Shown piece by piece: positions 1 to 58,223 of a stretch of DNA of 59,135 nucleotides. The stretch is from Octopus bimaculoides (Eukaryota). Made by a program: the position numbers and the translations under genes. Under the pieces are notes generated by a model. The model worked only from the letters and a program-made list of their open reading frames with translations. It was not told where the DNA came from and made no database searches. Location of the stretch: the NCBI RefSeq assembly GCF_001194135.2, contig NC_068994.1:29550519-29609653 (forward strand). Direction: 5' to 3'. The stretch's first letter is position 1; each line of letters opens with the position of its first letter.

Positions 1-2186
1 GAAGAAAAAATACCATCTTGACTGGGCTGCTGTTCAACAGTCTAGTGAATCAAACAAGAATTTAATTTCTATATAATCTAATTGGAGGGGTAGTAGTAAT
101 TTTAATTTAGAGGAAGGTAGATTAAGTAGTGATGGACAGCAGGTTAGGGATAAATCAAGCATGAGGAAAAGAAAAAAATGAAAATGGAAGGACGATTCCC
201 TAAGGAGTGGTTAGAGAAAATTTAAGGTAAGGGAATTAAGGTCAAGGTATTAAAGAATTACATCTATTCTTCAGTATATTTAGAATAATACAACGAAACA
301 CTAAAGTACTAAATTTAAAACCATAGGGAACATTAATAATTAAATTAGAACAAGATAAACATTTATAGTTAAAATAAGATATACATTAATGTGGGGTAGG
401 AAAAGAGAGATATTAATTTATAAGTAAAACCATAATATTAATGGTCAAAACCAGAACAAAGAGAGGGGGGGAAAGAAGGAGGAGGAAAAAAGGGGGAGGA
501 ATAAAGTTAGAAAAACAGGACTAAATTAAGAGAATTAAAGCTAAGGTTTTCGAAAAACTAATATAGTAGAAGAGACTCAGAATTACCTAGAGAAATGTAG
601 GAATATTATCAGTGTGTTGGGAAAGATTAAAATGTATTCTAAATTTATATTTAAAAGTTATAACTCAAATAAAGTAGTGAATAGTCAGGGAAATGAGAGG
701 AATTAAAATAATAAATTATTAGCAAGATTTACTTTTTAAGATATTTACTTTTTAAAATATTTAAAGGTGCGAGAGTAACAATGTACACATAGAACCCTAA
801 GGTCAGATCTATTGTTAATTAGATTAGGATTATCCTTAAGTTTAAAAATTTCGTNNNNNNNNNNGCGAGAGTAACAATGTACACATAGAACCCTAAGGTC
901 AGATCTATTGTTAATTAGATTAGGATTATCCTTAAGTTTAAAAATTTCGTAAATTTCCATAGAGCACAGTCCACAGCCATATCTACTATTTCTATAAGGT
1001 TGTGCTCTCCTGACGATTTCCCATTTAAGATTAAAATCGATACCATTTTCCTTCAATTCTCAAATTTTATTAGATAATGATGTGCTATTGGCGTTATGTT
1101 TAAGTCTAAATGAGGAATCGTTGTTTAAGGTTGATTATGCAACCAACATAAATGTAATTATTAGTTGGAGTAACTACTATACATTTATAGACCACATTAC
1201 GGGTTAAACAACGGCCAGATACCCGGCAGTGGGCTTTAATTCTACAATTGCAATTAAGAGGCTTATTAGCTATACATATATATTGCTATGTTGATTATTG
1301 AAAAAAGTATCTAAATTAGTTATATCAATATTGCTGGTTGTATTACTGGATATGCTATTGATATTGCTTGAGCTAGGAAGATTTATCTCATCAACTATGT
1401 TAACAGTTGAAGTATTATTATGTTCATTAACATGTGCATGATTATTGGTTGCGTTGCTGTTATTTATTGTTTAGTAGTTATTTGTATTGTTATCAATAAT
1501 AAGACAATTTTTATTTTCAAGGGTCCTAGTTAGTTCAATGTTCTTTCTATTTAACTTATTGATAATAGATCCTATATTTCCCAACCCACTGATAATATTC
1601 CTACATTTCTCTAGGTAATTCTGAGTCTCTTCTACTATATTACTTTTTCGAAAACCTTAGCTTTAATTCTCTTAATTTAGTCCTGTTTTTCTAACTTTAT
1701 TCCTCCCCCTTTTTTCCTCCTCCTTCCCCTTTGTTCTGGTTTTGGCCATTAATATTATGGTTTTACTTATAAATTAATATCTCTCTTCTACTACCCCACA
1801 TTAATGTATATCTTATTTTAACTATAAATGTTTATCTTGTTCTAATTTAATTATTAATGTTCCCTATGGTTTTAAATTTAGTACTTTAGTGTTTCGTTGT
1901 ATTATTCTAAATATACTGAAGAATAGATATAATTCTTTAATACCTTGACCTTAATTCCCTTACCTTAAATTTTCTTTAACCACTCCTTAGGGTATCGTCC
2001 TTCCATTTTCATTTTTTTCCCCTCATGCTTGATTTATCCCTAACCTGCTGTCCACCACTACTTAATTTACCTTCCTGTAAATTGAAATTACTACTACCCC
2101 TCCAATTAGATTGTATAGAAATTAAATTCTTGTTTGATTCACTGGACTGTTGAACAGCAGCCCAGTCAAGATGGTATTTTTTCTTC
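1..2186. repeat. Long inverted repeat (arms 1-624 and 1577-2186): inverted pseudo-LTR of PLE A
   Basis: gaagaaaaaataccatcttgactgggc at 1 is the reverse complement of the sequence ending at 2186; gttgggaaa 616-624 pairs with tttcccaac 1577-1585. The left arm runs off the window. Confidence 0.93.
745..1577 (-). pseudogene. Penelope-like element A, degraded C-terminal ORF (Asn-rich linker, Cys knuckle, GIY-YIG endonuclease)
   Basis: Minus-strand translation gives CNCRIKAHCRVSGRCLTRNVVYKC..YIYVG..LKQRF, then STSLSNKI*ELKENG..WEIVRRAQPY..CGLC..NRSDLRVLCVH, the PLE GIY-YIG/CCHH pattern, with stops and a frameshift. Confidence 0.88.
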
Positions 2187-3462: not shown

Positions 3463-4777
3463 CCAAGGCCGAAGGAAGACAATCGTATGCCNNNNNNNNN
3501 NNNNNNNNNNNNNNNNNNNNNNNNNNNNNNNNNNNNNNNNNNNNNNNNNNNNNNNNNNNNNNNNNNNNNNNNNNNNNNNNNNNNNNNNNNNNNNNNNNNN
3601 NNNNNNNNNNNNNNNNNNNNNNNNNNNNNNNNNNNNNNNNNNNNNNNNNNNNNNNNNNNNNNNNNNNNNNNNNNNNNNNNNNNNNNNNNNNNNNNNNNNN
3701 NNNNNNNNNNNNNNNNNNNNNNNNNNNNNNNNNNNNNNNNNNNNNNNNNNNNNNNNNNNNNNNNNNNNNNNNNNNNNNNNNNNNNNNNNNNNNNNNNNNN
3801 NNNNNNNNNNNNNNNNNNNNNNNNNNNNNNNNNNNNNNNNNNNNNNNNNNNNNNNNNNNNNNNNNNNNNNNNNNNNNNNNNNNNNNNNNNNNNNNNNNNN
3901 NNNNNNNNNNNNNNNNNNNNNNNNNNNNNNNNNNNNNNNNNNNNNNNNNNNNNNNNNNNNNNNNNNNNNNNNNNNNNNNNNNNNNNNNNNNNNNNNNNNN
4001 NNNNNNNNNNNNNNNNNNNNNNNNNNNNNNNNNNNNNNNNNNNNNNNNNNNNNNNNNNNNNNNNNNNNNNNNNNNNNNNNNNNNNNNNNNNNNNNNNNNN
4101 NNNNNNNNNNNNNNNNNNNNNNNNNNNNNNTTCAGTAACACATATAAGAATTTGCCAGTTCTTAGAGTACACAATAGTAAGAGTCTGTATGTAAGAAGTT
4201 GAGGCGTGTGGGACAGGGCGATCACTCGTCGTGATGTTAGGGCTTCCATGCCGGGCCGGGTTCTTGAGTACAGATGTTCTTCGCAGGCTGAGTTCTTGTC
4301 TATTATTTATCGTGGTGAAGATGAATCACACAAACAGAATCGAAGAGAGAAGTGCCGCGGTTAGCTGTTGGTAGCTGGTGTACGTAGAAGTCATGTTGAC
4401 GCTGTCGGCGATGCCGGTAGTCGTAGTGTCGTGTTGCTGCTGGCAGTCGTAGTTGTACGAAGCTGTTGATGTCGCTGGAACTGCTGCTGCTGCTCTGTGT
4501 GGTATACGGAACAAGTCTCTAAGAGATCTGAACCGCGACGATTTGACGGGTATAATTTAGTCTATTTATAGCAAAATAGAGGCTCCAGAGAGCATCTGAA
4601 AAACACTCTATCACGTGACCTTATTAGGGGCTGTGGTTGGTCGATTTACGTTCTGGCGGGAACGGTACGAAGCAGTTGCCGCTTCAAATAATAGTCAGTC
4701 ATGTGATGGATACAGTAGGCTGCTCTCTGCTACGCCCGAACTTGAATATTTATATTAGTGGGAAAGAGTGGTGTTCA

Positions 4778-4852
<75 letters not shown>

Positions 4853-6455
4853 GTACATAGGCATAATTATAGAATTAAAAAGGTGTTGCTTCCCCAGTAC
4901 GTGCTCTGAGGTTTAGTCTCAATGCATGGTACCTTCGGCAAGTGGCATTCTTCTGTCGTAACTTCGAGAGGATGGAAACTTCAAGGACTCTAACCATTCT
5001 TGTTTTAGGATGGTAGACGAAATTTGTTGCCCAAGTTAACCACCTGGTTATGTGGAATCTTTAGCGGAGATCACTCTGTTATAAGCATTTAAACCAGGTC
5101 TCCTGTTTTTGGCTGCCTTCATCCCTTGCTACCTCTAGTTTTGGAGGCATTGAAAAAGACTATGGTAGTTTTTAATAGGATAAACAAATAATTAACTAAA
5201 ATGAAGGATATACATGTAAAGCCTATAGTGAAAGGAACTCTAGGTATGGTTTTTGATAATAGACGTTAAAAATGGTTAAATAAGATCCTAAAGGCTGTCA
5301 ACTTCAACTGAACTGGAAAAAAAGGGGGTGGGGACAATACCTTCAATGGTGGCAGTTAAGATAAGGGAGAAGGCAATGGGCGATGGAAGTGCTGCGCACG
5401 AGGAAGGTAAAATGGAAAGGAACTGAGCGTTTTTTTCCCACCCCTTTCTTTAAAATTTTATTTTTAAAATTCCTCAGTTTTATACAATGAGAATTACGAT
5501 CCCGAAAGAAATTTCTTTTTCCAAAAATTTCAATTAAAAAAAAAAAAATTGTCCCCTGTTTCGTGACCTCTTTTCCTTCCCCATGTGGTAGTGAAAGCTA
5601 TTCCGAAACTCTGCATGATTTGTTCTATTTGTAACAAATTATTTCCGAAAAGCTATTTATTTGATTGTGGACAGCTAGAATGCGAAGAATGTTGAAAAAA
5701 AAAATAAATAAATCGAGCGTGGAGATATAATATTATAAACAATTTTAACTTTTAAACTGACTTAAAGCTATCTTGTTATTCTCATATTTTAAAAAGATAT
5801 TCGTATTTTTGAGAAACAGGCATTAAGTATACTTATCTTCATTATTTGAGAAAAATAATTAAGAAACGAAATACAGTATAAAATATAAAAGTTGTTACAG
5901 AAACTGACATTTTTTCTTTTTTTTGCTCTACATCGAATTAAGGAAGTTGTCACGTTTATAATTTGCATAACAATAGCTGTATTTGTTGGTAAATAGATGT
6001 AAATTTTGATATTACTGCAATTTCAGTGTAAGTAATTTTAAATGTTTAGATTTAGCTCAATATTTAGCACATGTACATAACCATTCATTTATTCATCCAC
6101 AGACACACACACACATATAGGCACACAGTCTTACTCATTATATTAACACATCTATTTACGAATAAGACAATACCAAGATTTTTTTTTCTGTATTATGACT
6201 AGTAAAATAATGATTCTGAAAAAAGGTTTAGGTTTATTTTGGTTGTCTATCGCTCACTCAATTCAGATTTTCGAATAACCGTTCATACAATTAAGATTCT
6301 ACTTTTTAAAATATTGAAGTACAATAAATGAAATTATTTACTGAATCATTTGAAAGTGTTGTGTCGTTAAAAAAAATCAATAATTGAAGACATAAATCCT
6401 AACAAACAAATAGTTTATGTATAAATAGCTTAACATTCGATATCTCACCGCGTAA

Positions 6456-6549
6456 GCCCGCATAGCTCAGTCGGTAGAGCATCAGACTTTTATGACTGAA
6501 TCTTCACAGAGTCATCTGAGGGTCGTGGGTTCAAGTCCCCCTGCGGGCG
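6456..6549 (+). tRNA. tRNA-Lys-TTT: tRNA-Lys(UUU) with 21-nt intron (6493-6513) at canonical position 37/38
   Basis: Acceptor stem GCCCGCA/TGCGGGC; D stem GCTC/GAGC; anticodon stem TCAGA/TCTGA; anticodon TTT 6489-91; GGTTCAAGT B box; one T.C mismatch in the T stem; T7 Pol III terminator 6559-65. Confidence 0.92.
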
Positions 6550-6558
6550 AAGCATTTG

Positions 6559-6565
6559 TTTTTTT
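6559..6565 (+). terminator. Pol III T-tract terminator of tRNA-Lys
   Basis: Seven T residues starting 10 nt after the discriminator base. Confidence 0.75.
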
Positions 6566-7532: not shown

Positions 7533-7759
7533 GGCGGCGAGATGGCAGAAACGTTAGCACGCTGGGCGAAATGCTTAGCGGTATTTCGTCTGCTGCAACG
7601 TTCTGAGTTCAAATTCCGCTGCGGTCGACTTAGCCTTTCATCCATTCGGGGTCGATTAAATAAGTACCAGTTACGCACTGGGTCGATGTAATCAACTTAA
7701 TCCGTTTGTCTGTTCTTGTTTGTCCCCTCTATGTTTAGCTCCTTGTGGGCAATAAAGAA
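7533..7759 (+). mobile_element. tRNA-derived SINE, family A, near full length
   Basis: ggcggcgagatggcagaaacgttagcac..ctgagttcaaattccgc..gcctttcatcc..; closely matches the copy at 57991-58223. Confidence 0.85.
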
Positions 7760-9214: not shown

Positions 9215-9411
9215 CACACATTCTTTTATTTGGTTCAGTCATTTAACTGCGGCCATGCTGGAGCATGGCCTTTAGTCGAGCAGATCGACCCCAAGACTGA
9301 TTCTTTGTAAGCCTAGTACTTATTCTATCGGTCTCTTGCCGAGCCGCTAAGTTACGGGGACATAAACACACCAGCATCGGTTGTCAAGCGATCTTGTGGG
9401 GACAAACACAG

Positions 9412-9442
<31 letters not shown>

Positions 9443-9560
9443 CACGACGGACCTCTTTCAATTTCCGGTTACCAAATCCACTCACAAGGCTTTGGTCAGC
9501 TCGAGGCTATAGTAAAAGACACTTGACCAAGGTGCCACGCAGTGGGACTGAACCCGGAAC
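9215..9560 (-). mobile_element. tRNA-derived SINE, family B (internal (TG)n)
   Basis: Minus strand gggttcagtcccactgcgtggcaccttggtcaagtgtc..gtccccgtaacttagcgg..ccagcatggccgcag; related copies near 28735, 35130 and 56380. Confidence 0.8.
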
Positions 9561-11128: not shown

Positions 11129-12189
11129 ATGTATATATNNNNNNNNNNNNNNNNNNNNNNNNNNNNNNNNNNNNNNNNNNNNNNNNNNNNNNNNNNNNNN
11201 NNNNNNNNNNNNNNNNNNNNNNNNNNNNNNNNNNNNNNNNNNNNNNNNNNNNNNNNNNNNNNNNNNNNNNNNNNNNNNNNNNNNNNNNNNNNNNNNNNNN
11301 NNNNNNNNNNNNNNNNNNNNNNNNNNNNNNNNNNNNNNNNNNNNNNNNNNNNNNNNNNNNNNNNNNNNNNNNNNNNNNNNNNNNNNNNNNNNNNNNNNNN
11401 NNNNNNNNNNNNNNNNNNNNNNNNNNNNNNNNNNNNNNNNNNNNNNNNNNNNNNNNNNNNNNNNNNNNNNNNNNNNNNNNNNNNNNNNNNNNNNNNNNNN
11501 NNNNNNNNNNNNNNNNNNNNNNNNNNNNNNNNNNNNNNNNNNNNNNNNNNNNNNNNNNNNNNNNNNNNNNNNNNNNNNNNNNNNNNNNNNNNNNNNNNNN
11601 NNNNNNNNNNNNNNNNNNNNNNNNNNNNNNNNNNNNNNNNNNNNNNNNNNNNNNNNNNNNNNNNNNNNNNNNNNNNNNNNNNNNNNNNNNNNNNNNNNNN
11701 NNNNNNNNNNNNNNNNNNNNNNNNNNNNNNNNNNNNNNNNNNNNNNNNNNNNNNNNNNNNNNNNNNNNNNNNNNNNNNNNNNNNNNNNNNNNNNNNNNNN
11801 NNNNNNNNNNNNNNNNNNNNNNNNNNNNNNNNNNNNNNNNNNNNNNNNNNNNNNNNNNNNNNNNNNNNNNNNNNNNNNNNNNNNNNNNNNNNNNNNNNNN
11901 NNNNNNNNNNNNNNNNNNNNNNNNNNNNNNNNNNNNNNNNNNNNNNNNNNNNNNNNNNNNNNNNNNNNNNNNNNNNNNNNNNNNNNNNNNNNNNNNNNNN
12001 NNNNNNNNNNNNNNNNNNNNNNNNNNNNNNNNNNNNNNNNNNNNNNNNNNNNNNNNNNNNNNNNNNNNNTATATATATATACGCATATATACACGCGCGC
12101 GTGCACACACACATACATACGTCTGCATAACAGCCTACTAACTACTCTACCTGTATATATATATATACCACGGGTATTGGGGTATGACT

Positions 12190-12891: not shown

Positions 12892-15789
12892 NNNNNNNNN
12901 NNNNNNNNNNNNNNNNNNNNNNNNNNNNNNNNNNNNNNNNNNNNNNNNNNNNNNNNNNNNNNNNNNNNNNNNNNNNNNNNNNNNNNNNNNNNNNNNNNNN
13001 NNNNNNNNNNNNNNNNNNNNNNNNNNNNNNNNNNNNNNNNNNNNNNNNNNNNNNNNNNNNNNNNNNNNNNNNNNNNNNNNNNNNNNNNNNNNNNNNNNNN
13101 NNNNNNNNNNNNNNNNNNNNNNNNNNNNNNNNNNNNNNNNNNNNNNNNNNNNNNNNNNNNNNNNNNNNNNNNNNNNNNNNNNNNNNNNNNNNNNNNNNNN
13201 NNNNNNNNNNNNNNNNNNNNNNNNNNNNNNNNNNNNNNNNNNNNNNNNNNNNNNNNNNNNNNNNNNNNNNNNNNNNNNNNNNNNNNNNNNNNNNNNNNNN
13301 NNNNNNNNNNNNNNNNNNNNNNNNNNNNNNNNNNNNNNNNNNNNNNNNNNNNNNNNNNNNNNNNNNNNNNNNNNNNNNNNNNNNNNNNNNNNNNNNNNNN
13401 NNNNNNNNNNNNNNNNNNNNNNNNNNNNNNNNNNNNNNNNNNNNNNNNNNNNNNNNNNNNNNNNNNNNNNNNNNNNNNNNNNNNNNNNNNNNNNNNNNNN
13501 NNNNNNNNNNNNNNNNNNNNNNNNNNNNNNNNNNNNNNNNNNNNNNNNNNNNNNNNNNNNNNNNNNNNNNNNNNNNNNNNNNNNNNNNNNNNNNNNNNNN
13601 NNNNNNNNNNNNNNNNNNNNNNNNNNNNNNNNNNNNNNNNNNNNNNNNNNNNNNNNNNNNNNNNNNNNNNNNNNNNNNNNNNNNNNNNNNNNNNNNNNNN
13701 NNNNNNNNNNNNNNNNNNNNNNNNNNNNNNNNNNNNNNNNNNNNNNNNNNNNNNNNNNNNNNNNNNNNNNNNNNNNNNNNNNNNNNNNNNNNNNNNNNNN
13801 NNNNTATATAATACAAAGAATATGTATGCATGTATACCCACATATATGTACATACTTACATCTACATGTGTATATAGGTGCATATCAGGGTATAGGACGT
13901 TAGAAAAATGAACTACAGACAACGGAACGAACACATAGGAAAACAGATAGCCACTTGGAATTAATCCTTCGTCAGCTGCCTCTATTCTAACTAGACGTTT
14001 ATATATGCATACATACATACATACGTACATACATACATGCATGCATACATACATACATACATACATACATACATGCATAAGTACATAGATACTTACATAC
14101 ATATGTGTAAGCGCACGCACATCGACCCACACACAAACAAATAAAAATAACGCAGTTCGGATAACGGACAGAGTCAACGACTATTGAAAAGGTTGCAAGG
14201 CGCAACGAAAATTTTAGAAAAAATAAATAAGTAAATGAGTGGAAGTTGAACTGGTGAGTGTGTTGAATAATAAGGCACTAAAAGAGAATGTCTCTCTCCA
14301 GACACAATAAAATAATGTGTGTGTGTGTGTGTGTGTGTACGCGGGCGCGCATAACGAATAGCTTCCTAGATTCTCCACCAGAACTAGAAACCGAATCTAC
14401 ATTTTTCTACAAGGTTCTCTTCCTATTGTTCTCGGCTTTTGCACTAGAAAATTTATGTGTTAGTTGTTAACCCGTAACTTTTCGAATGAAACTTAGGCCA
14501 AAGCAGAAAGGAGACAAATCCGTTCCATCTCTCATCCGTTCTTCTAGCTGTCAACTAAAGATGCACTTAATTACCTACAGAATAGAAAACAGAATGGCAA
14601 ATAATCTGTGTATATCAACAACTCGAAGAAGCTGTATCTTACATTGTATCGATGAAACTAAAAAGGTCCATTTCAGTTACTAATATTTTTTCTCTCTCAT
14701 TTATTCGGTGCATGTATTCGTTACATATGTTTAAGAGATGAGTAATAAGATGTCGACTTACATAAGATAATAGGTACCTATAAGTGGTGAGATCGAATTT
14801 GTTTCTAAACTCCAGCTTTCAGCGCAGGTGTGTAATAGCTGCCAAAATGAAGATTGTAGGTGATGTTCAGATCGACCTGGTATGTGTACAGTTGAACAAA
14901 GGCATAAACAGGCAAGGTATCAAGTCATTTATACTATAAAAATATATTGAAGAGGAATGCAAATCCTTCCCGAAACACAACAAAATATATACAGGAGGAC
15001 GTTAGGAACTGCCCTCGGGAGTTTTCCCGATTTTTGCTAAATATGTTCTTTTATCTATTTTCGCCTTTCTCTTAATATATTCAATAGGTTTTATAAGACG
15101 AAATATACTACAAACTGACTTGAGACATGTGTATGCTGTATGTATGTATGTATGTATGTATGTATGTATGTATGTATGTATGTATGTATGTATGTATGCA
15201 CGTATGTACGTGCGTGCATGCATGCAAACATACATGCATACACACACACATACATACATACATACATACATACATACATACATACATGGACCAAGAGATT
15301 TAATGTGGATGTGTGCAATATACACAGTGAATTTATATAGTCTTTGTCATATAATTCAGTGAAAAAGAAAATATTTACCAAAGTAGGGACGATAAAGAAG
15401 TCAAAAGTTCCGTGTCTATGGTCCATCACGCACCAACGTCAAATCTGGGAAGTGGTTGAATTTCGACTGTGGAAAGGGCTGAGGTTAATTCCAGAGCGGG
15501 GTAAATTGTTTCGGTCTTTCTCTCTCTTCTATCTTCTCTTCTCTGTCTCTCCCCCTCTCTCTATCTCTTATTAATTTTCACCTTATTCAGAAGTGAATTT
15601 CTCACAACAAAGATGATACCATGCTCTTTGATCTCGTCTAAGCTCTTTCCCGGCCAGAAAAATATATAGTTTCTCCCATAGTTCCTAATTCTGCAAGACG
15701 TGTATCTTGTAGTATTTCAATGTCCAGCTGAAATTATAGCAGTTAATTGTTAATCATCACTGTCTTTCGTGTTTTACAGATCTTCAGAA

Positions 15790-24544: not shown

Positions 24545-26152
24545 ATGTCACACTTGGGTGGGAAAACCATGCATATGTCTTCAAAACCTTTCGTTCCTCA
24601 GGGGTCAGAGTTTCAGACCCAATCAAATATGGCAGAAGTTCGAGAATATATCTTCCAAGACAGTAGTTATCCTGGTACTCAGTTTGTTCAACCTTGTTAT
24701 CAACCAGCTGAACTGAGGCCCAATATAGTGCAGGCTGCAGTTAATGAACAACCTACACCTGAGAACAAGAGCTCAACCATTAATTTTGACAATTCTTCCC
24801 ATGAAGGCTGTGCTTGTTGCCAAAAGACATGTCAATGCCCTAGTTGTACTGATGGTGGAAATGGTAGTGGAAGTGGTGTTGGCACTAGCAATAGCAGCAA
24901 TATAGGAGAACATAACATTTGCAATGTTAATGAACAACCTGTCACTAATTTGCCAATTCAGACGACTGGAAATGGAAAAAAGCAGCTATTTTGTGAATTT
25001 TGTGGTAAGAAATTTGTCCAAGAATATGTCCTGAAGGTCCACAGGCGTAAACATACTGGGGAAAAGCCATATGAATGTGAAATCTGCTCCAAGAAATTTG
25101 CCAGAAATGATACACTACGCAAACACAAGAGAATTCATACTGGACAGCCAAATGGCAGTGTTTCTAATGTTGGTATCTCTCCTAGTTTGAGTTTAATGAT
25201 TGCGCAAGGTGTTGTTGCCCAGGAAAATGGTGTAACCAATACTGGGAACCCAGGCACTATGATGTCTTCTGTTTCTAATTCTCAGACGTCTCAGAGAAAC
25301 AGTCAGAAATCATATACCTGTGACATTTGCCTGAAACCGTTTGCTCAGCGCCATTATTTACAGATCCATAAAAGAACACATACAGGTGAGCGCCCTTTTC
25401 ACTGTCAGGTTTGTGAACGAAGTTTCACTCGTAGAGACACACTGATTATTCATCAGAGAACACACACTGGTGTGAAACCATTTCATTGTGAAATCTGCAT
25501 GCAACAATTTGCACACAAACACAACCTCCAGATACACAAACGGAAACATACCGGGGAGAAACTGTTTCAATGTGACATCTGCGCTGAACTGTTCACACGC
25601 CGTGATTATTTACAAATTCATCGGCGGACTCATACAGGAGAGAAACCCTTCCAGTGTGATCTCTGTATCCAGAAGTTTGCCCGTCGCACCACATTGGAAA
25701 TTCACAGAAGAACACACACAGGAGAGAAGCCATTCCACTGTGAGTTCTGTGGAAAACAATTTGCTAATCGAGACAAGCTTCGCATACACCAGAGAACACA
25801 TGTACGCAAGAAGCCACACCAGTGCACTATATGTCTAAAGAAGTTTGCACGGAGAGATACACTTGAAATTCACAGCCGGAGACACTCTGGCCTCAAGCCA
25901 TTCCATTGTGACATTTGTCTGAAGAAATTTGCACAGAAAGATTACCTTCAGATTCATAAGAACACTGTGCACTCTGGACAGAAACCTTTCCAATGTGACC
26001 TCTGCACACAGAAGTTCTCCCGCCGTGATTCTCTGCAGCGGCACAAGAAAACACACTATAAACAGGTTGATGAAGTGCAGAAGGCCACATCTAGCATCAC
26101 AAATAACAATGTGGAAGAGGTGCAGCCACTGAATAAATACTTATGGTTGTAA
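24545..26152 (+). CDS. C2H2 zinc-finger protein, 535 aa, 11 fingers (2+9), single coding exon
   Basis: Uninterrupted ORF with CxxC-x12-HxxxH fingers and TGEKP-type linkers. The start codon is uncertain (several nearby Met). Confidence 0.95.
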   Translation: MSHLGGKTMHMSSKPFVPQGSEFQTQSNMAEVREYIFQDSSYPGTQFVQPCYQPAELRPNIVQAAVNEQPTPENKSSTINFDNSSHEGCACCQKTCQCPSCTDGGNGSGSGVGTSNSSNIGEHNICNVNEQPVTNLPIQTTGNGKKQLFCEFCGKKFVQEYVLKVHRRKHTGEKPYECEICSKKFARNDTLRKHKRIHTGQPNGSVSNVGISPSLSLMIAQGVVAQENGVTNTGNPGTMMSSVSNSQTSQRNSQKSYTCDICLKPFAQRHYLQIHKRTHTGERPFHCQVCERSFTRRDTLIIHQRTHTGVKPFHCEICMQQFAHKHNLQIHKRKHTGEKLFQCDICAELFTRRDYLQIHRRTHTGEKPFQCDLCIQKFARRTTLEIHRRTHTGEKPFHCEFCGKQFANRDKLRIHQRTHVRKKPHQCTICLKKFARRDTLEIHSRRHSGLKPFHCDICLKKFAQKDYLQIHKNTVHSGQKPFQCDLCTQKFSRRDSLQRHKKTHYKQVDEVQKATSSITNNNVEEVQPLNKYLWL

Positions 26153-31049: not shown

Positions 31050-33880
31050 TTTTGCTGACTAGGGCAGGTCTTTTCAAGAACCTCATACTGCCTGAGATCC
31101 TGGTCCTTTGTCATCTCCATCAGGCTCAGATTCCTGAGGTCAACCTTAACCACTTCATCCCATGTCTTTTTGGGTCTCTCTCATCTGCAAGTTTTGGCCA
31201 CATTTAGTGATTGGCATTTCTTTATGTATCTGTCATTATCCACATCCATCATTTACCCATATCAGCACCATCTTTGTTGTATACATCTGATTCCTCTTAT
31301 ACTAGTTTTTCACTCAGCACCTTAGTACTTATTCTTTCTTGCACATTCACATTGCACATCCAACTAAGCATGCTCACTTCATTTCTTTCCAGTCTTCTTA
31401 AGTCCTCTGCATTAAAGGCCCATATGTCACTACCATGCAACACTGCAGTTTTAATATAAGCATAATATAGTCTGTCCTTCATCAGTTTCTCTTAAGGAAA
31501 AGGCTATTGTTGTCAGCAGTGGTATGAGGTTGGGCTGATAAGTTCATAGACTGGCTATCAAGGAGTGATGTTAGAGCTGTGAAATCCTGCATTTCAACCC
31601 TTCTTATTTATAACTGCATCATTTCTTTCCAGGTAAACTGACATATGACTATTCAAAGAAGACTTCAAAAGTAGCTAGTAGTAACTTCTCTTGCAGAAAA
31701 AGGGTTTAGCCCCTCAAGGACACACATGCTGACATGGTTGCTACATTAGGGGGACAACTCTGCAGCTTTATAAAAGGGGGCTGCTGAATTTAGGAGGGGA
31801 AGGGTGAATCTTGAAGATGACCCAAGGTCTGGATATCCTGCAGCTGCTACTGCCAAGGAAAACATTCATTGTGTTCACCACATGGTGATGGGCATTCGAC
31901 TGTAAATCAAATAGCCAATGCTGTTAGCATGTCCTATGAGAGAGTTGAGAATATTTGCACAGTGAACTTGGCATGATGAGGGTTTCTGCTCAGTGGATGC
32001 CATGTCTTCTGATACCTGATCAGAAGTGCACCAGGCTGATCACGTCATGAGAAAATCTGTTATTGTTTGAAGAAGACCTAGTTGGTTTTCTTGAATGTTT
32101 CATAAGCCAGGATGAATTTTGGGTTCATCACTTTGAGCCAGAGACAAAGAGACAATACATGCAGTGGAAACACCTCTCCTCACCTCCTCTGAAGAAGACC
32201 AAGGTTGATTCATCTACAGAGAAAGTAATGGTCTCAGTTTTTGGGATGCAAAAGGCATTGTGTTTATTGATTATCTTCAAAAGGGCTACATGATCAATGA
32301 AGAGTACTATGCCAACTTGCTGAAGCAGTTATATGCACGGCCATCAAGATCAAATGCCCAGGAAAACTGACACATAAGTCTTTGGTTTCAATGGCTGCTG
32401 TGCTTGACTGTGGCTTTGGACTGGTTGATTATTCTCCCTATTCTCCTGATTTGAACCCATCTGACTATCATCTGTTCCCCAGTATGAAACAACACTTGAC
32501 TGGGAGCCAGTTTGCAGTGATGATGATGTCATATCTGCTGTTGATGACTTTTTGACCAACAGGATGAAAACTTCTTCATCAATGGGATCCATTGCAGCAC
32601 TCTGGCTACTATACTTTCAGAGCAACCACCTCCTTTGCTTATTACCTTTCCTAAGTAACGAAAGCTATCAACTATTTCTAGTGAACCGTTTGGGCATTTC
32701 AGAGACTTGGTTTTTCGTATGCTTGTATGAACTGCTCCAGTGCATCTACCACACCTGAAGCTTATATTTTCATATAGTCTGTCAGCAATTTGACTAGATC
32801 TCTTGTGTGTTCATAGCTTATATCAAGTACAGTGTATGAACTTTATTCCTACTTACTGAAACCTTAGTCTATACTAAGTTTATTTTAAGGCCTCTTAATT
32901 TCAGGTTTAGCTTCCATGTGTGGAGTTTCTTCTCTAATTCCTCTATGAATTCACTTATAAGAACTAGATCTTCAGTATATAGGAGTTCCCAAGAATAACA
33001 AGTGTTCAACTCCACTGTGATGGCTTGTAGGACTATGATGAATAAGAAAGGACTAAGGACTGAACCTTGATAGACTCCGACTTCATCACTGAATCCATTA
33101 TCAACTCTCACTTTACTTGCTGCATCCTCAAGTCGCTCATCTACTTCTAGTTTCCTCAGTGCCCACCAGATTATTGAACATAGTGCCTTGTCAAATACTT
33201 TCCCCAAATCAAGGAAAGCCAGCTATAGTAGTTTATTCTTAGCCAAGTATTTCTCTTGTAGTTGCCTCGCTAAGAAGATTGCATCTGTGGTGTCTCTTCT
33301 GCAGTCAAATCCAAACTGCATCTCTTCTAGGTCTACTCTATCATGAATCAATTGACCTATAACTTCCTCTTTGACCTTCATAATTTTATCTAGAAGTTTG
33401 ATTCCCCCTACAATTGATTACCTTTGCCCTTGTAGCAGTTTACAATGATACTGCTATACCAGTCAGTGGGTTTGACACCCTCCTGAATGACTTGATAACT
33501 TTACCATACTGCTGTCATCTTGAAGCGCTGGTTCTTCTATTGTGTCAGCATGGGGTAGTCCCTGTTTATCCCATGCATTCTCCACATTCAACATCTTTTT
33601 ATGATAGCATTTCTACACCAGTCTCTTTTATTCTATATCAATGGCAAGTTTGCTTCCATCATTCTGAATACACATCTCACAAATGATATGACAGTTCTCT
33701 TTCACAGATTGTCTTGCAATCCTGAAAATTTCTCACCTCTGATCCTCACATTGCAGGACATGTGCAAATCTCTTCTTTTCTGCCTCACCTTTAGTCTAGT
33801 GCACAAGATGCCTCGATGTCCTCAATTTGTTGACACTTTTTATACTTCACCATAATTCATCTATTAACATAACAAATGAC
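31050..33880 (-). mobile_element. Degenerate RTE LINE (RT and C-terminal region), interrupted by mariner
   Basis: QFGF..TTDAIFLARQLQEK, FLDLGKVFD, GVYQGSVLSPFLF, LLYTEDL, VDSFRYLG, KTWDEVVKVDL. Confidence 0.88.
31523..32600 (+). mobile_element. mariner transposon remnant inserted in the RTE
   Basis: Left TIR tatgaggttgggctgataagttc; EDDPRSG, WMPCLL, QDEFWVHHFEPETKRQ, YSPDLNPSDYHLF. No right TIR seen. Confidence 0.88.
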
Positions 33881-35129: not shown

Positions 35130-35470
35130 CACATGCTTCTGGGTTCAGTCCTGGACAAGTGTCTTCTACTATGGTCTCAGGCCAACCAAAACCTTTGTGA
35201 ATGGATTTGGTAGATGGAAACTGAAATAAACCTGTCAGATGTATATGTTTGTATGTATTTGTCTCCCCACCACCACCGCTTGACAACCAGTGCTGGTTTA
35301 TTTATATCCCTGTAACTTAGCGGTCCGACAAAAAAAGAGATTGATAGAACAAGTACCAGGCTTAAAAAAACAGAAAATAAGTACTGGAGTCGATTCATTC
35401 AACTATAAAAGCTCTTCAAGGCAGTGCTCCAGCATAGCCACAGTCTAATGACTGAAACAGATGAAAGATA
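35130..35470 (+). mobile_element. Family B SINE
   Basis: gggttcagtcctggacaagtgtc..ccctgtaacttagcgg..ccagcatagccacagtctaatgactgaaac. Confidence 0.78.
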
Positions 35471-36410: not shown

Positions 36411-37664
36411 AAAAAATAATATATATATATATATACACACATATATATATATATTTATATATATATATTTATATATATATAAATTTAATATATGAATTCA
36501 AGTAATCTGGTAGTACTCATAAAAATAACTCCTTAATGTATCATTCTACAAAACAAGGAATATATATAGAAAATGATAAGGAATGTATAAAGTCACAAAT
36601 GACAATAATAGTTTGATGAAATTTCATTTAACAATAAGAAAATTTGAATGTTACAACAAATTGTTTTGTAACTTAAAAACATATAAATGATTTATATTAT
36701 TATATTCAATAATAAATAAATTACTTACATGTTTGCATTAATACAAAATGCAAAAAATCCTTCTAAATAATGCAGAATTTAAGTTACGTCTTCATGAAAG
36801 AAGGTCTTTGTTAAATTTAATAAGACTTTCATCAAAGTATTTGTCTGTCACTTATGACTTTATATCATCATCATCATCATTAACATTTAACGTCCAACCC
36901 ATGCTGGCATGGGTTGGATGATTTGACCAGAGCTGGTAAGCTTGGGGGTTGTGTGCATAACTATTTGTGTGTGTGCTGTTCATGTTTTTGGTTGAGTCTT
37001 ATTCTTGATTCTTTAACCCATCTCTTGAGTTAGAAAAGTGTGGCTAGATTTTCTAGTATAAGTAGTAGTAGTAGTAGTATTAATAGTTTTGTGAGATAGT
37101 CTCAAGTAAACATCAGTCAGTAACAACACAAGTAGACTTTTCAATACTCACCTGAGTGATATTTAAAAAAGTTCATTCAGCTGGCCAGAACTGGAAGTTG
37201 TGTATTTCTTGGAATTTTCTTGTTTAAAAACTGATATTAGATGTAGGAATGGCTCCTACAATTGTTCTCTCATTACCCTTCTCATATGACCCATACGAGA
37301 TTTAAAAATTTTTCATCAATTATTGAATTGGAATTCAATAATCCCCACTTCATATAAACCAAGTGGCAATTGGTTTTGTTTGTTGATGCTGCTGATCCCG
37401 TTGTTGGGTATACTCTGACACTACTGTGTGAGTCTTTGAAGAAAATCATCATTGTTGCCATCATCATCATCACAATTATCATCATTGTTGCCATTATTTT
37501 CATAATCATCATCACCATCATTTATCCCTTTTTTTAGACTGATACCAGCTTTATACTGTGTCAATGTTTTATAATCCCTCACTCCCTACACAACCTATAA
37601 ATATGCAGCCTTGTGCGATATGTGAGAAATCATAATAATCATCATCATCATCATCATCATTATT

Positions 37665-37825
37665 GTGGTAATTTGTTTGTCTTTATGTTCTGAGTTCAAA
37701 TTCCGCCGAGGTCGACTTTCCCTTTCATCTTTTCAGTTGAGTACTGGGATCGATGTAATCAACTATCCTCCTCCCCCAAATTTCAGGCCTTGTGCCTATA
37801 GTAGAAAGAATTATTATTGTCATCA

Positions 37826-37857
<32 letters not shown>

Positions 37858-38151
37858 GCGGTATTTTGTTTGTCTTTACATTCTGAGTTCAAATTCCCCC
37901 AAGGTCGACTTTGCCTTTCATCCTTTCGGTGTCGATAAATTAAATATCAATGAAACTCTGGAATCAATGTAATCAACTTATCCCCTCCCGCAAAATGGCT
38001 GCTCTTGTGGCAAAATTTGAAACCATTTCTGCTGACCTAGCCTTTCATCCTTTTAGGGTCAATAAATTAAGTACCAGTCAAGTACTGCGGTCAGTGTGAT
38101 TGACCATCCCCCTCCCCTCACATTCCATGCCTTGTGCCTATAGTAGAAAGG

Positions 38152-38183
<32 letters not shown>

Positions 38184-38791
38184 GGCAGTGAGCTGATAGA
38201 ATTGTTAGCTTGCCAGACAATATGCTCGGTGGCATTCCTTCTGGTTCTACATTCTGAGTTCGATTTTGCCTTTGGTCTTTCAGGAGTTGATGAAATAAAT
38301 ATTAGTTGAGCACTGACGTTGAAGTAATTGATTGCCCCCTCCCTCAAAATTTTAGGCCCTGTGGCTATCAATAAAAGGATTATTATAGGGCAGCAAGCTG
38401 GTAGCATTGGAAAGAATGCTTTTCAGTATTTATTCCAGCTCTTTACATTATGAGTTCAAGTCCTGCTAAGGTCATCTTTGCCTTTTATCCTTTCAGGGTC
38501 AATAAAATAAAGTACCAGTCAAGTACTGGGGTTGCTGGCCTTGTGCCTAAAGTAGGAACTATTGTTATTATTATTGTTAAAGGCAGCAAGCTGGCAGAAT
38601 CAAATGTGTTGGGAAAAATGTTTAGCAGCATTTCTTCTGAATTTATGTTCTGAGTTCAAATTCTGTTGGAGTTGACTTTGCCTTTCATCCTTTTGGGGTC
38701 TATAAATTAAGTACCAGTGAAACACTGGGGTTGATTTAATTGACTAGTCCCCTTCCCCAACATTTCAGGCCTTGTGCCTATAGCAGAAAGG

Positions 38792-38844
<53 letters not shown>

Positions 38845-51582: not shown

Positions 51583-52511
51583 ATAATAATAATAATAATG
51601 ATAATAATAATAATAACAATNNNNNNNNNNNNNNNNNNNNNNNNNNNNNNNNNNNNNNNNNNNNNNNNNNNNNNNNNNNNNNNNNNNNNNNNNNNNNNNN
51701 NNNNNNNNNNNNNNNNNNNNNNNNNNNNNNNNNNNNNNNNNNNNNNNNNNNNNNNNNNNNNNNNNNNNNNNNNNNNNNNNNNNNNNNNNNNNNNNNNNNN
51801 NNNNNNNNNNNNNNNNNNNNNNNNNNNNNNNNNNNNNNNNNNNNNNNNNNNNNNNNNNNNNNNNNNNNNNNNNNNNNNNNNNNNNNNNNNNNNNNNNNNN
51901 NNNNNNNNNNNNNNNNNNNNNNNNNNNNNNNNNNNNNNNNNNNNNNNNNNNNNNNNNNNNNNNNNNNNNNNNNNNNNNNNNNNNNNNNNNNNNNNNNNNN
52001 NNNNNNNNNNNNNNNNNNNNNNNNNNNNNNNNNNNNNNNNNNNNNNNNNNNNNNNNNNNNNNNNNNNNNNNNNNNNNNNNNNNNNNNNNNNNNNNNNNNN
52101 NNNNNNNNNNNNNNNNNNNNNNNNNNNNNNNNNNNNNNNNNNNNNNNNNNNNNNNNNNNNNNNNNNNNNNNNNNNNNNNNNNNNNNNNNNNNNNNNNNNN
52201 NNNNNNNNNNNNNNNNNNNNNNNNNNNNNNNNNNNNNNNNNNNNNNNNNNNNNNNNNNNNNNNNNNNNNNNNNNNNNNNNNNNNNNNNNNNNNNNNNNNN
52301 NNNNNNNNNACTTCCCTTGGCAAACAGGACACAGTAGTGTGTCGATAAGCCAGCTGGAGGAGATGTCCTCCTGGGGCTAAAAGCAACAGTAACATCCACC
52401 CCTAGGGGTCAGCCACACTTAAGTGGCAATATACTACACTCTCTCTCTCTATATATATATACATACACACATACATACTTTTATTAAAAAGCATAAAAAA
52501 TATCACAAAAA

Positions 52512-57990: not shown

Positions 57991-58223
57991 GAGGCGGCGA
58001 GCTGGGAGAAACGTTAGCACGCCTGGCGAAATGCTTAGTGGTATTTCGTCTGCCGCTACGTTCTGAGTTCAAATTCCGCCGAGGTCGACTTTGCCTTTCA
58101 TCCTTTCGAGATCGATAAATTAAGTACCAGTTACGCACTGGGGTCGATATAATCGACTTAATCCGTTTGTTCGTCCTTGTCTGTCCCCTCTGTGTGAGGT
58201 CCCTTGTGGGCAGTAAAGAAATA
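57991..58223 (+). mobile_element. Full-length family A SINE with 15-bp target-site duplication
   Basis: agaaataatcgtagc at 57976-57990 and again at 58224-58238. Confidence 0.92.

What the first reader, a model, noticed from the sequence alone, without database searches (positions are those of the whole stretch)
6456..6565. Intron-containing tRNA-Lys(UUU) with an intact anticodon-intron helix
Seen: a 21-nt insert (tgactgaatcttcacagagtc) exactly after base 37. C32 can pair with the third-from-last intron base G6511, and U33-U35 with A6510, G6509 and A6508; a Pol III terminator follows. Established: this A-I pair is a TSEN substrate feature; human and Drosophila tRNA introns are mostly in Tyr-GUA, Ile-UAU and Leu-CAA (plus Arg-UCU in vertebrates), while S. 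cerevisiae Lys-UUU has an intron. Inference: a spliced Lys-UUU gene is atypical relative to model animals and may be a lineage-specific intron gain and a source of circular intron RNA. I do not know how common it is in molluscs. One T-stem mismatch (T.C) is a caveat.
Basis: partly seen in the sequence, partly recalled or inferred. Interest (0 to 1): 0.72.

Follow-up and report, generated by a model that had tools for sequence, protein, structure and literature searches.

The report
Intron-containing lysine tRNA gene, cephalopod
This is a normal-looking lysine tRNA gene interrupted by a 21-base intron at the standard position; such interrupted lysine tRNA genes are rarely mentioned for animals but are common in marine invertebrate DNA, so it is an ordinary member of an under-described class.

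Summary
Window 6456-6549 (+) is a complete nuclear-type tRNA-Lys(UUU) gene (Rfam tRNA model, 60.1 bits against a threshold of 29). It has a 21-nt insert (6493-6513) exactly between positions 37 and 38, a possible C32:G6511 anticodon-intron pair, an upstream TATA-like element and a T7 run downstream.

The evolutionary reading is not supported.
- The third-from-last intron base is G in all 104.
- All 76 with animal-type acceptor stems have a T-run terminator.
- The "caveat" T-stem mismatch (U50.C64) recurs in seven other genes with two other acceptor stems, so it is a subfamily trait, not decay.
- The closest mature sequence (5 of 73 differences) lies on a contig whose only named protein relatives are from a leech and an abalone.

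Shared repeats with Octopus bimaculoides place the window in an octopus-like cephalopod. I could not count Lys-UUU genes in cephalopod genomes or test splicing.

Verdict: a probably functional, TSEN-spliced tRNA gene, and a new member of a known kind. Interest is modest and lies mainly in the gap between the literature's summary of animal tRNA introns and what marine invertebrate DNA shows.

The parts
6421..6429 (+). TATA-like element (TATAAATAG), about 35 nt upstream of tRNA position 1
   Evidence: Read from the sequence. In 75 related genes, TATAWA occurs in only 7, but 6 of the 11 matches fall at -36 to -32, the same place as here. This is weak supporting evidence for an upstream Pol III element.
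6456..6492 (+). 5' exon, tRNA positions 1-37. Contains the acceptor 5' strand, the D arm (A-box-like TAGCTCAGTCGG, 6463-6474), the anticodon stem 5' strand, and C32, U33, anticodon UUU (6489-6491) and A37.
   Evidence: Rfam alignment and manual parse.
6493..6513 (+). 21-nt intron at the canonical 37/38 position (tgactgaatcttcacagagtc)
   Evidence: Shown as an insertion in the anticodon loop in the Rfam alignment. The position is identical in 104 related genes.
6508..6511 (+). Intron bases -6 to -3 (A G A G) that can pair with U35, U34, U33 and C32. G6511 is the anticodon-intron (A-I) pair partner of C32.
   Evidence: G at -3 in 104/104 relatives. A or G at -4 in 69/76. Positions -5 and -6 are not conserved.
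6514..6549 (+). 3' exon, tRNA positions 38-73. Contains the anticodon stem 3' strand, the variable loop, the T arm (B-box-like GGTTCAAGTCC, 6528-6538, with U50.C64), the acceptor 3' strand and discriminator G.
6555..6565 (+). Pol III terminator-like T runs (TTT g TTTTTTT)
   Evidence: Read. All 76 animal-type relatives have at least T4 within 20 nt of the 3' end. The offsets range from 1 to 9 nt, and the window's is 9.

Best explanation
This is a functional, RNA-polymerase-III-transcribed nuclear gene for tRNA-Lys(UUU) in an octopus-like cephalopod genome.

Proposed mechanism:
- The primary transcript carries a 21-nt intron between positions 37 and 38.
- The tRNA splicing endonuclease (TSEN) removes the intron. 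It measures from the mature domain and uses the C32:G(-3) anticodon-intron pair to place the 3' cut.
- The exons are joined by the animal RTCB-type ligase, giving a 73-nt tRNA that reads AAA (and AAG) codons.

The intron is not a recent local acquisition. The gene belongs to a widespread class of intron-bearing Lys-UUU genes in marine eukaryotes, including spiralian animals. Within that class it falls in a subfamily marked by a U50.C64 T-stem mismatch.

Shown here: the gene anatomy, the conservation of the splice determinants, and the distribution. Inferred: transcription, splicing and the enzymes involved.
For: Gene integrity:
- Full-length match to the tRNA model at 60.1 bits. This is at the upper end of the 52-62 bits scored by intron-bearing relatives.
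- All stems pair except 50:64.
- Pair 6:67 is C-G where the 22 other mature variants have G.U. Both sides changed and pairing is kept.
- A-box and B-box-like sequences, a TATA-like element at about -35 and a T7 run are present.
- The gene is single-copy in the window, with no SINE body attached.

Splice determinants:
- The intron is exactly at 37/38.
- G at -3 is invariant in 104/104 unique relatives, and -4 pairs with U33 in 69/76. In alignment A1 the figures are 14/14 and 12/14.

Distribution:
- There are 76 unique animal-type genes in 23 mature variants, and all have terminators.
- Contigs carry a CDI-domain gene, a U3 snoRNA and tRNA clusters.
- One contig carries a GT92 ORF whose only named relatives are from Helobdella and Haliotis.
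- The nearest mature sequence (5/73 differences) is that spiralian-affiliated group, and it shares U50.C64.
- GACTG at intron positions 2-6 occurs in the window and in 3 of 7 other U50.C64 genes, against 1 of 68 others (Fisher p = 0.002).

Host:
- Interspersed repeats are shared with an Octopus bimaculoides chromosome locus at 80-84% identity.
Against: - There are no expression or splicing data.
- The energy model gives the C32:G(-3) pair a probability of only 0.02. It prefers a hairpin of the intron ends that buries the 3' splice site. The same is true of most relatives (median 0.004), so this is weak evidence against.
- The intron scores poorly against the family's end consensus (0.4 bits against a median of 6.9). 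Its first base is T where 81% of relatives have A.
- No relative has this acceptor stem.
- No cephalopod or named mollusc copy could be retrieved.
- U50.C64 would lower a tRNAscan-SE score.
Confidence: 0.8

Rival explanations
1. It is a decaying tRNA pseudogene. A former Lys-UUU gene took a 21-bp insertion in the anticodon loop and a T-stem mutation, and is no longer processed into a working tRNA.
For: - U50.C64 mismatch.
- The predicted fold does not present the splice sites in the classical way.
- The intron departs from the family consensus at its ends.
- Cephalopod genomes are repeat-rich.
Against: - The insertion is at exactly 37/38 and has the invariant G at -3 and A at -4.
- The mismatch is shared by seven other genes from at least three sources with two other acceptor stems.
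- The double change at 6:67 keeps pairing.
- The terminator and box sequences are intact.
- The bit score is at the upper end of the range for relatives.
Confidence: 0.1
2. It is a functional gene, but the intron is a recent cephalopod-specific gain. Its resemblance to the other intron-bearing Lys-UUU genes would then be convergent, forced by TSEN's requirements.
For: - The intron sequence is only weakly similar to others. The best alignment beats 95% of shuffles but not more, and the consensus score is low.
- The literature lists no Lys-UUU intron for animals.
- tRNA introns are known to be gained and lost.
Against: - The closest mature sequences all carry an intron at the same site.
- They share the U50.C64 trait and, in three cases, the GACTG motif at intron positions 2-6.
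- One of them sits on a spiralian-affiliated contig.
- The class is very broad.
Confidence: 0.08
3. It is the head of a tRNA-derived SINE or another mobile-element fragment, not a tRNA gene.
For: Lys-type tRNA-derived SINEs are common in animals (general knowledge). The window holds many interspersed repeats.
Against: - It has a complete acceptor 3' strand and discriminator, followed within 10 nt by a T run.
- There is no tRNA-unrelated body.
- There is no second copy in 59 kb.
- The Octopus locus has no match to this region.
Confidence: 0.02

Closest known systems
Intron-bearing Lys-UUU genes on marine metagenome contigs, especially L024/L043/L054 (JAAUYG01) and L072, L005, L006, L052
   Same: - Intron at 37/38, of 19-23 nt.
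- G at -3.
- The same anticodon arm and D arm.
- T arm GTGGG...CCCCC with U50.C64.
- T-run terminator.
- GACTG at intron positions 2-6 in L024, L043 and L072.
   Different: - The acceptor stem differs: GCCCGCA/TGCGGGC here against GCCCGGT or GCCCGGC there.
- Pair 6:67 is C-G here instead of G.U.
- The first intron base is T, not A.
- The anticodon-intron pairing can extend to 4 bp here but is only 2 bp in most.
- The source organisms of those contigs are unnamed.
Saccharomyces cerevisiae tK(UUU), the textbook intron-containing Lys-UUU gene
   Same: The same isoacceptor, an intron at 37/38 of similar length (about 23 nt in yeast), and removal by the Sen/TSEN endonuclease.
   Different: - Fungal exon sequences differ.
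- Fungi ligate with Trl1 plus Tpt1, whereas animals use RTCB (text).
- In yeast all copies of this tRNA carry the intron. The copy census here is unknown.
Metazoan intron-containing tRNAs Tyr-GUA, Ile-UAU, Leu-CAA and Arg-UCU
   Same: The canonical intron position, dependence on the anticodon-intron pair, Pol III gene structure, and possible release of the intron as a circle (PMC4536317).
   Different: - A different isoacceptor.
- Those introns are tied to intron-dependent modifications. None is known for Lys-UUU.
Giant-virus-type contigs with intron-bearing Lys-UUU (L001-L004, L018, L022, L047)
   Same: The same anticodon arm, an intron at 37/38, G at -3, and a mismatch at 50:64 (A.C).
   Different: - The acceptor stem is GCCTTxx.
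- The introns are AT-rich (10-24 nt).
- There is no clear T-run directly downstream in some.
- The gene neighbourhood is viral.

Membership tests
Nuclear cytoplasmic-type tRNA gene (Rfam RF00005) | Cloverleaf with four stems and conserved D-loop and T-loop residues | tested here: met
   60.1 bits against a gathering score of 29, covering model positions 1-71 of 71, with one non-standard pair at 50:64. Stems show compensatory changes across relatives.
Nuclear cytoplasmic-type tRNA gene (Rfam RF00005) | Pol III gene signals: internal A and B boxes and a downstream T run | tested here: met
   TAGCTCAGTCGG at 6463-6474, GGTTCAAGTCC at 6528-6538, and a T7 run at 6559-6565. This was judged by eye against the textbook consensus, not with a scoring tool.
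tRNA-Lys(UUU) isoacceptor | U33, anticodon UUU at positions 34-36, a purine at 37, and Lys-type body sequence | tested here: met
   CTTTTA at 6487-6492. The body differs at 5-7 of 73 positions from other Lys-UUU genes recovered. No isotype-specific model was run.
Canonical eukaryotic (TSEN-type) tRNA intron | Intron located between positions 37 and 38 | tested here: met
Canonical eukaryotic (TSEN-type) tRNA intron | Anticodon-intron pair: position 32 pairs with the intron base three from the 3' splice site | tested here: met
   C32 with G6511. G at this position in 104/104 relatives and CG in 14/14 rows of alignment A1.
Canonical eukaryotic (TSEN-type) tRNA intron | 3' splice site exposed in a bulge or loop | tested here: inconclusive
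   It can be drawn as a 3-nt bulge. However, the constrained minimum-energy fold pairs these bases, with unpaired probability 0.07-0.08.
Canonical eukaryotic (TSEN-type) tRNA intron | Actually excised, with the exons ligated | not testable with these tools
   No RNA data are available.
Strict archaeal bulge-helix-bulge (hBHBh') intron | Two 3-nt bulges separated by a 4-bp helix and flanked by an outer intron helix | tested here: not met
   The 4-bp helix and both 3-nt bulges can be drawn, but the outer helix is a single G-C pair and costs energy (-22.9 against -25.2).
tRNA intronic circular RNA (tricRNA) | Intron ends joined into a stable circle | not testable with these tools
   This follows only by analogy with Drosophila and human (PMC4536317).
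tRNA-derived SINE | tRNA-like head joined to an unrelated body and tail, present in many copies | tested here: not met
   A terminator lies directly after the acceptor end, and there is no other copy in the window or in the Octopus locus.

The most novel reading that the evidence does not exclude
The Lys-UUU intron is an old, selectively kept feature of spiralian (and perhaps wider marine-invertebrate) genomes. It has been overlooked because tRNA-intron surveys lean on vertebrates, insects and nematodes.

Several features are fixed or near-fixed:
- G at intron position -3 is invariant.
- A at -4 and A-G at the first two intron positions are near-fixed.
- A recurrent unpaired 50:64 position marks a subfamily.

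Together these would point to an intron-dependent step, for example a modification in the anticodon loop or T arm as for Tyr, Ile and Leu, or to a conserved small circular RNA.
Probability: 0.25. Interest if true: 0.55.

Novelty: new member of a known kind. Interest (0 to 1): 0.3.

Why it matters
For this window it settles the annotation: a probably working, spliced tRNA-Lys(UUU) gene, not a pseudogene.

More broadly, current summaries say animal tRNA introns are confined to Tyr, Ile, Leu and Arg genes. Here, one pattern scan recovered over a hundred distinct intron-bearing Lys-UUU genes, and some lie on clearly metazoan contigs. If a proper survey of mollusc and annelid genomes confirms this, the list of "conserved animal tRNA introns" needs a lineage-aware revision. 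Lys-UUU would also become a fourth case in which to ask what an intron does for a tRNA.

This is a modest correction, not a new mechanism.

Tried and rejected
- **Unconstrained folding as a test of the helix.** The minimum-energy fold is a misregistered long hairpin, not a cloverleaf. Constrained folding of 76 relatives showed the energy model almost never predicts the C32:G(-3) pair, although that G is invariant. I therefore dropped thermodynamics as a test.
- **ARAGORN in its default mode.** It finds the gene but cannot type it.
- **Fetching cephalopod, abalone and leech DNA and scanning it for tRNAs.** About 105 kb held no tRNA, so no direct mollusc comparison was possible.
- **Looking for cephalopod contigs among the metagenome hits through shared repeats.** Only the tRNA itself matched.
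- **Naming the metagenome hosts.** The CDI-gene search returned only unnamed proteins. Accession look-ups in the literature found nothing.
- **Literature searches for a mollusc or spiralian Lys-UUU intron.** No report was found in the held library.
- **Intron end-consensus scoring.** The window's intron is a poor match, so I do not claim clear intron homology beyond the GACTG motif and the -3/-4 bases.
- **A SINE or local duplication origin.** Rejected after self-BLAST of the window.

Full report
**1. What is in the sequence**

Window 6456-6549 on the + strand reads as a complete class I tRNA.
- Acceptor stem: GCCCGCA with TGCGGGC.
- D arm: GCTC-AGTCGGTA-GAGC.
- Anticodon stem: TCAGA with TCTGA.
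- Anticodon loop: C32 U33 U34 U35 U36 A37, followed by 21 extra bases (6493-6513, tgactgaatcttcacagagtc), then A38.
- Variable loop: GGGTC.
- T arm: GTGGG-TTCAAGT-CCCCC.
- Discriminator: G.

The Rfam tRNA model matches this interval end to end at 60.1 bits (gathering score 29, E = 1.5e-10 over the whole 59 kb). It is the only Rfam hit in the window. The alignment shows a 22-nt insertion in the anticodon loop and one non-standard pair in the T stem, U50.C64. ARAGORN reports the same 94-nt interval but cannot name the anticodon.

Downstream lies aagcaTTTgTTTTTTT, with the T7 run at 6559-6565. Upstream, at about -35, lies TATAAATAG (6421-6429).

**2. The anticodon-intron helix**

C32-G6511, U33-A6510, U34.G6509 and U35-A6508 can pair. 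This leaves U6512, C6513 and A38 as a 3-nt bulge holding the 3' splice site, and U36, A37 and U6493 as a 3-nt bulge holding the 5' site.

Energetically this is not the preferred fold.
- Without constraints, the sequence folds into a misregistered hairpin.
- With the four cloverleaf stems enforced, the best structure (-30.1 kcal/mol) pairs the intron's ends (UGACU with AGUCA) on top of the anticodon stem.
- The anticodon-intron drawing scores -25.2.

I then folded 76 related genes the same way. The C32:G(-3) pair has a median predicted probability of 0.004, against 0.02 for the window. So the energy model is simply uninformative for this class, and I did not use it as evidence either way.

**3. 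Related sequences**

A pattern for a Lys-UUU anticodon arm with 5-35 extra bases after A37 found 4 IMG/VR contigs.

Parsing these gave 104 distinct pre-tRNAs. Of these, 76 have animal-type acceptor stems (GCCCG...GGGC), in 23 mature-sequence variants, with introns of 11-32 nt and a mode of 20 nt.

Three results matter.
- **The A-I partner is fixed.** The intron base three from the 3' splice site is G in 104 of 104. The next base in is A or G, pairing with U33, in 69 of 76. Positions -5 and -6 are not conserved. In a MAFFT alignment of 14 representatives, G(-3) is the only invariant intron column. Pair 32:-3 is C-G in 14/14 and pair 33:-4 is U-A in 12/14. The cloverleaf stems show compensatory changes well above the shuffle and slide controls.
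- **They look like real genes.** All 76 animal-type genes have a T4 or longer run within 20 nt, and 75 of the 76 start it 2-9 nt after the 3' end.
- **The mismatch is shared.** The T arm GTGGG...CCCCC, with the same U50.C64 mismatch, occurs in seven other unique genes from at least three sources, with two other acceptor stems. The mismatch is therefore a subfamily trait rather than damage.

The window's 60.1 bits is at the upper end of the 52-62 bits of the intron-bearing relatives.

**4. Who carries these genes**

The window itself shares interspersed repeats (150-234 nt, 80-84% identity) with a 22-kb locus of an Octopus bimaculoides chromosome. Its intact C2H2 zinc-finger ORF finds cephalopod proteins among its named hits. 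This supports an octopus-like cephalopod that is not itself in the protein collection.

Evidence on the metagenome contigs:
- L014, L101 and L103 carry a cyclin-dependent-kinase-inhibitor domain gene next to the tRNA.
- L027 carries a U3 snoRNA and further tRNAs.
- L024 carries a glycosyltransferase-92 ORF whose only named relatives are from Helobdella robusta (a leech) and Haliotis asinina (an abalone).

The L024/L043/L054 group has the mature sequence closest to the window's (5 of 73 differences) and shares U50.C64. GACTG at intron positions 2-6 is found in the window and in 3 of the 7 other U50.C64 genes, but in only 1 of 68 others (Fisher p = 0.002).

Overall intron similarity is weak.
- The best alignment, to L072, beats about 95% of shuffles.
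- The window's intron scores 0.4 bits against the family's end consensus, where the median is 6.9.

I therefore regard common ancestry of the intron within the U50.C64 subfamily as likely but not proven.

**5. What it is and how it works**

The best explanation (confidence about 0.8) is a working Pol III gene. Its transcript is cut by the tRNA splicing endonuclease at 37/38 and after C6513, and the exons are ligated to give a 73-nt tRNA-Lys(UUU).

Features supporting function, beyond the score and signals:
- Pair 6:67 is C-G where all 22 other mature variants have G.U. Both sides changed and pairing is preserved.
- The gene is single-copy in the window, with no SINE body.

Transcription, splicing, the ligase used and any circular intron product are inferred from what is established for animal tRNA splicing (PMC4536317; PMC12168002). 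They are not shown here.

**6. Rivals**
- **Pseudogene (0.1).** It fits the mismatch and the odd predicted fold. It is opposed by the exact intron position, the invariant -3 G, the shared mismatch and the compensatory pair.
- **Functional gene with a recent cephalopod-specific intron gain (0.08).** It fits the weak intron similarity. It is opposed by the fact that the nearest exon relatives all carry an intron at the same site, together with shared subfamily traits.
- **SINE head (0.02).** It is opposed by the immediate terminator and the lack of copies.

**7. Comparison with what is known**

The literature I could read states that animal tRNA introns are prevalent in Tyr-GUA, Ile-UAU, Leu-CAA and Arg-UCU and "essentially absent" from other metazoan tRNAs according to GtRNAdb (10.1101/2025.06.17.660180; see also PMC12168002). 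I found no paper in the held library that links mollusc names with intron-containing tRNAs.

Lys-UUU introns are textbook in budding yeast (my own knowledge). So the window's gene is a new member of a known kind. The mechanism is standard, the isoacceptor is unusual for model animals, and the class is evidently common in marine invertebrate DNA.

**8. Limits**
- I could not count Lys-UUU genes, with or without an intron, in this or any named mollusc genome. The 105 kb of Octopus, Haliotis, Helobdella and related loci that I could fetch contained no tRNA.
- The hosts of most metagenome contigs are unnamed.
- The metagenome scan was truncated, so the counts are lower bounds and are not a balanced sample.

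**9. Verdict**

Interest is 0.3. This is a useful annotation, and a pointer to an under-described but probably routine class, rather than a surprise.

Noticed in passing
window 24545-26152 (+): An intact 535-aa single-exon C2H2 zinc-finger ORF with nine or more fingers (Pfam). The best database hit is only 64% identical, on a 2.4-kb Logan contig. Named hits include Octopus, Argonauta and Acanthosepion proteins.
   Followed up: partly
window 9220-9444, 7544-7697, 35246-35468, 37663-38841, 58004-58158: Interspersed repeats shared at 70-84% identity with an Octopus bimaculoides chromosome locus (L133). These are SINE-like elements, and I used them only to place the window in an octopus-like genome.
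   Followed up: partly
window 32869-33207 (-): A reverse-transcriptase fragment (Pfam RVT_1, E = 2.5e-7), presumably a decayed non-LTR retrotransposon.
   Followed up: no
window, 14 N runs (e.g. 3492-4130, 11139-12069, 12892-13804, 51621-52309): The window is a gapped draft assembly. About 5 kb is N, and there are many AC/AT/CATA-type microsatellites. Most long "ORFs" are artefacts of these.
   Followed up: no
L001-L004, L018, L022, L047 (IMG/VR and metagenome contigs, two labelled GVMAG): Contigs with giant-virus-like gene content carry a Lys-UUU tRNA with a 10-24 nt AT-rich intron at 37/38. They have G at -3 and an A50.C64 mismatch. Intron-bearing tRNAs in giant-virus bins may deserve their own look.
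   Followed up: no
L012 (OFDO01002803.1), tRNA 1286-1380 (-), ORF about 121-1095 (-): A 1.6-kb, 32% GC contig joins bacterial-type HisI and RsmH/MraW coding sequence (Pfam E = 1e-94) to an animal-type, intron-bearing tRNA-Lys(UUU) with a T-run terminator. It could be a chimeric assembly or a transfer between host and symbiont. This is unresolved.
   Followed up: partly
L014, L101, L103: In three contigs from different samples, a CDI-domain (p21/p27-like) gene lies within a few kb of the intron-bearing Lys-UUU gene. This suggests conserved linkage in one unnamed animal group. A fourth relative's locus (L125) has the CDI gene but no tRNA within 6 kb.
   Followed up: partly
Position 50:64 across all recovered Lys-UUU genes: The second T-stem pair is unusually often unpaired in this isoacceptor. 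It is U.C in 3 mature variants, C.U in 1, and A.C in the virus-type genes, alongside A-U, U-A and G-C. No explanation is offered.
   Followed up: no
L027 1318-1538 (+): A full-length U3 snoRNA (152 bits) lies next to two tRNA genes on a metagenome contig, which confirms a eukaryotic nuclear origin for that contig group.
   Followed up: no
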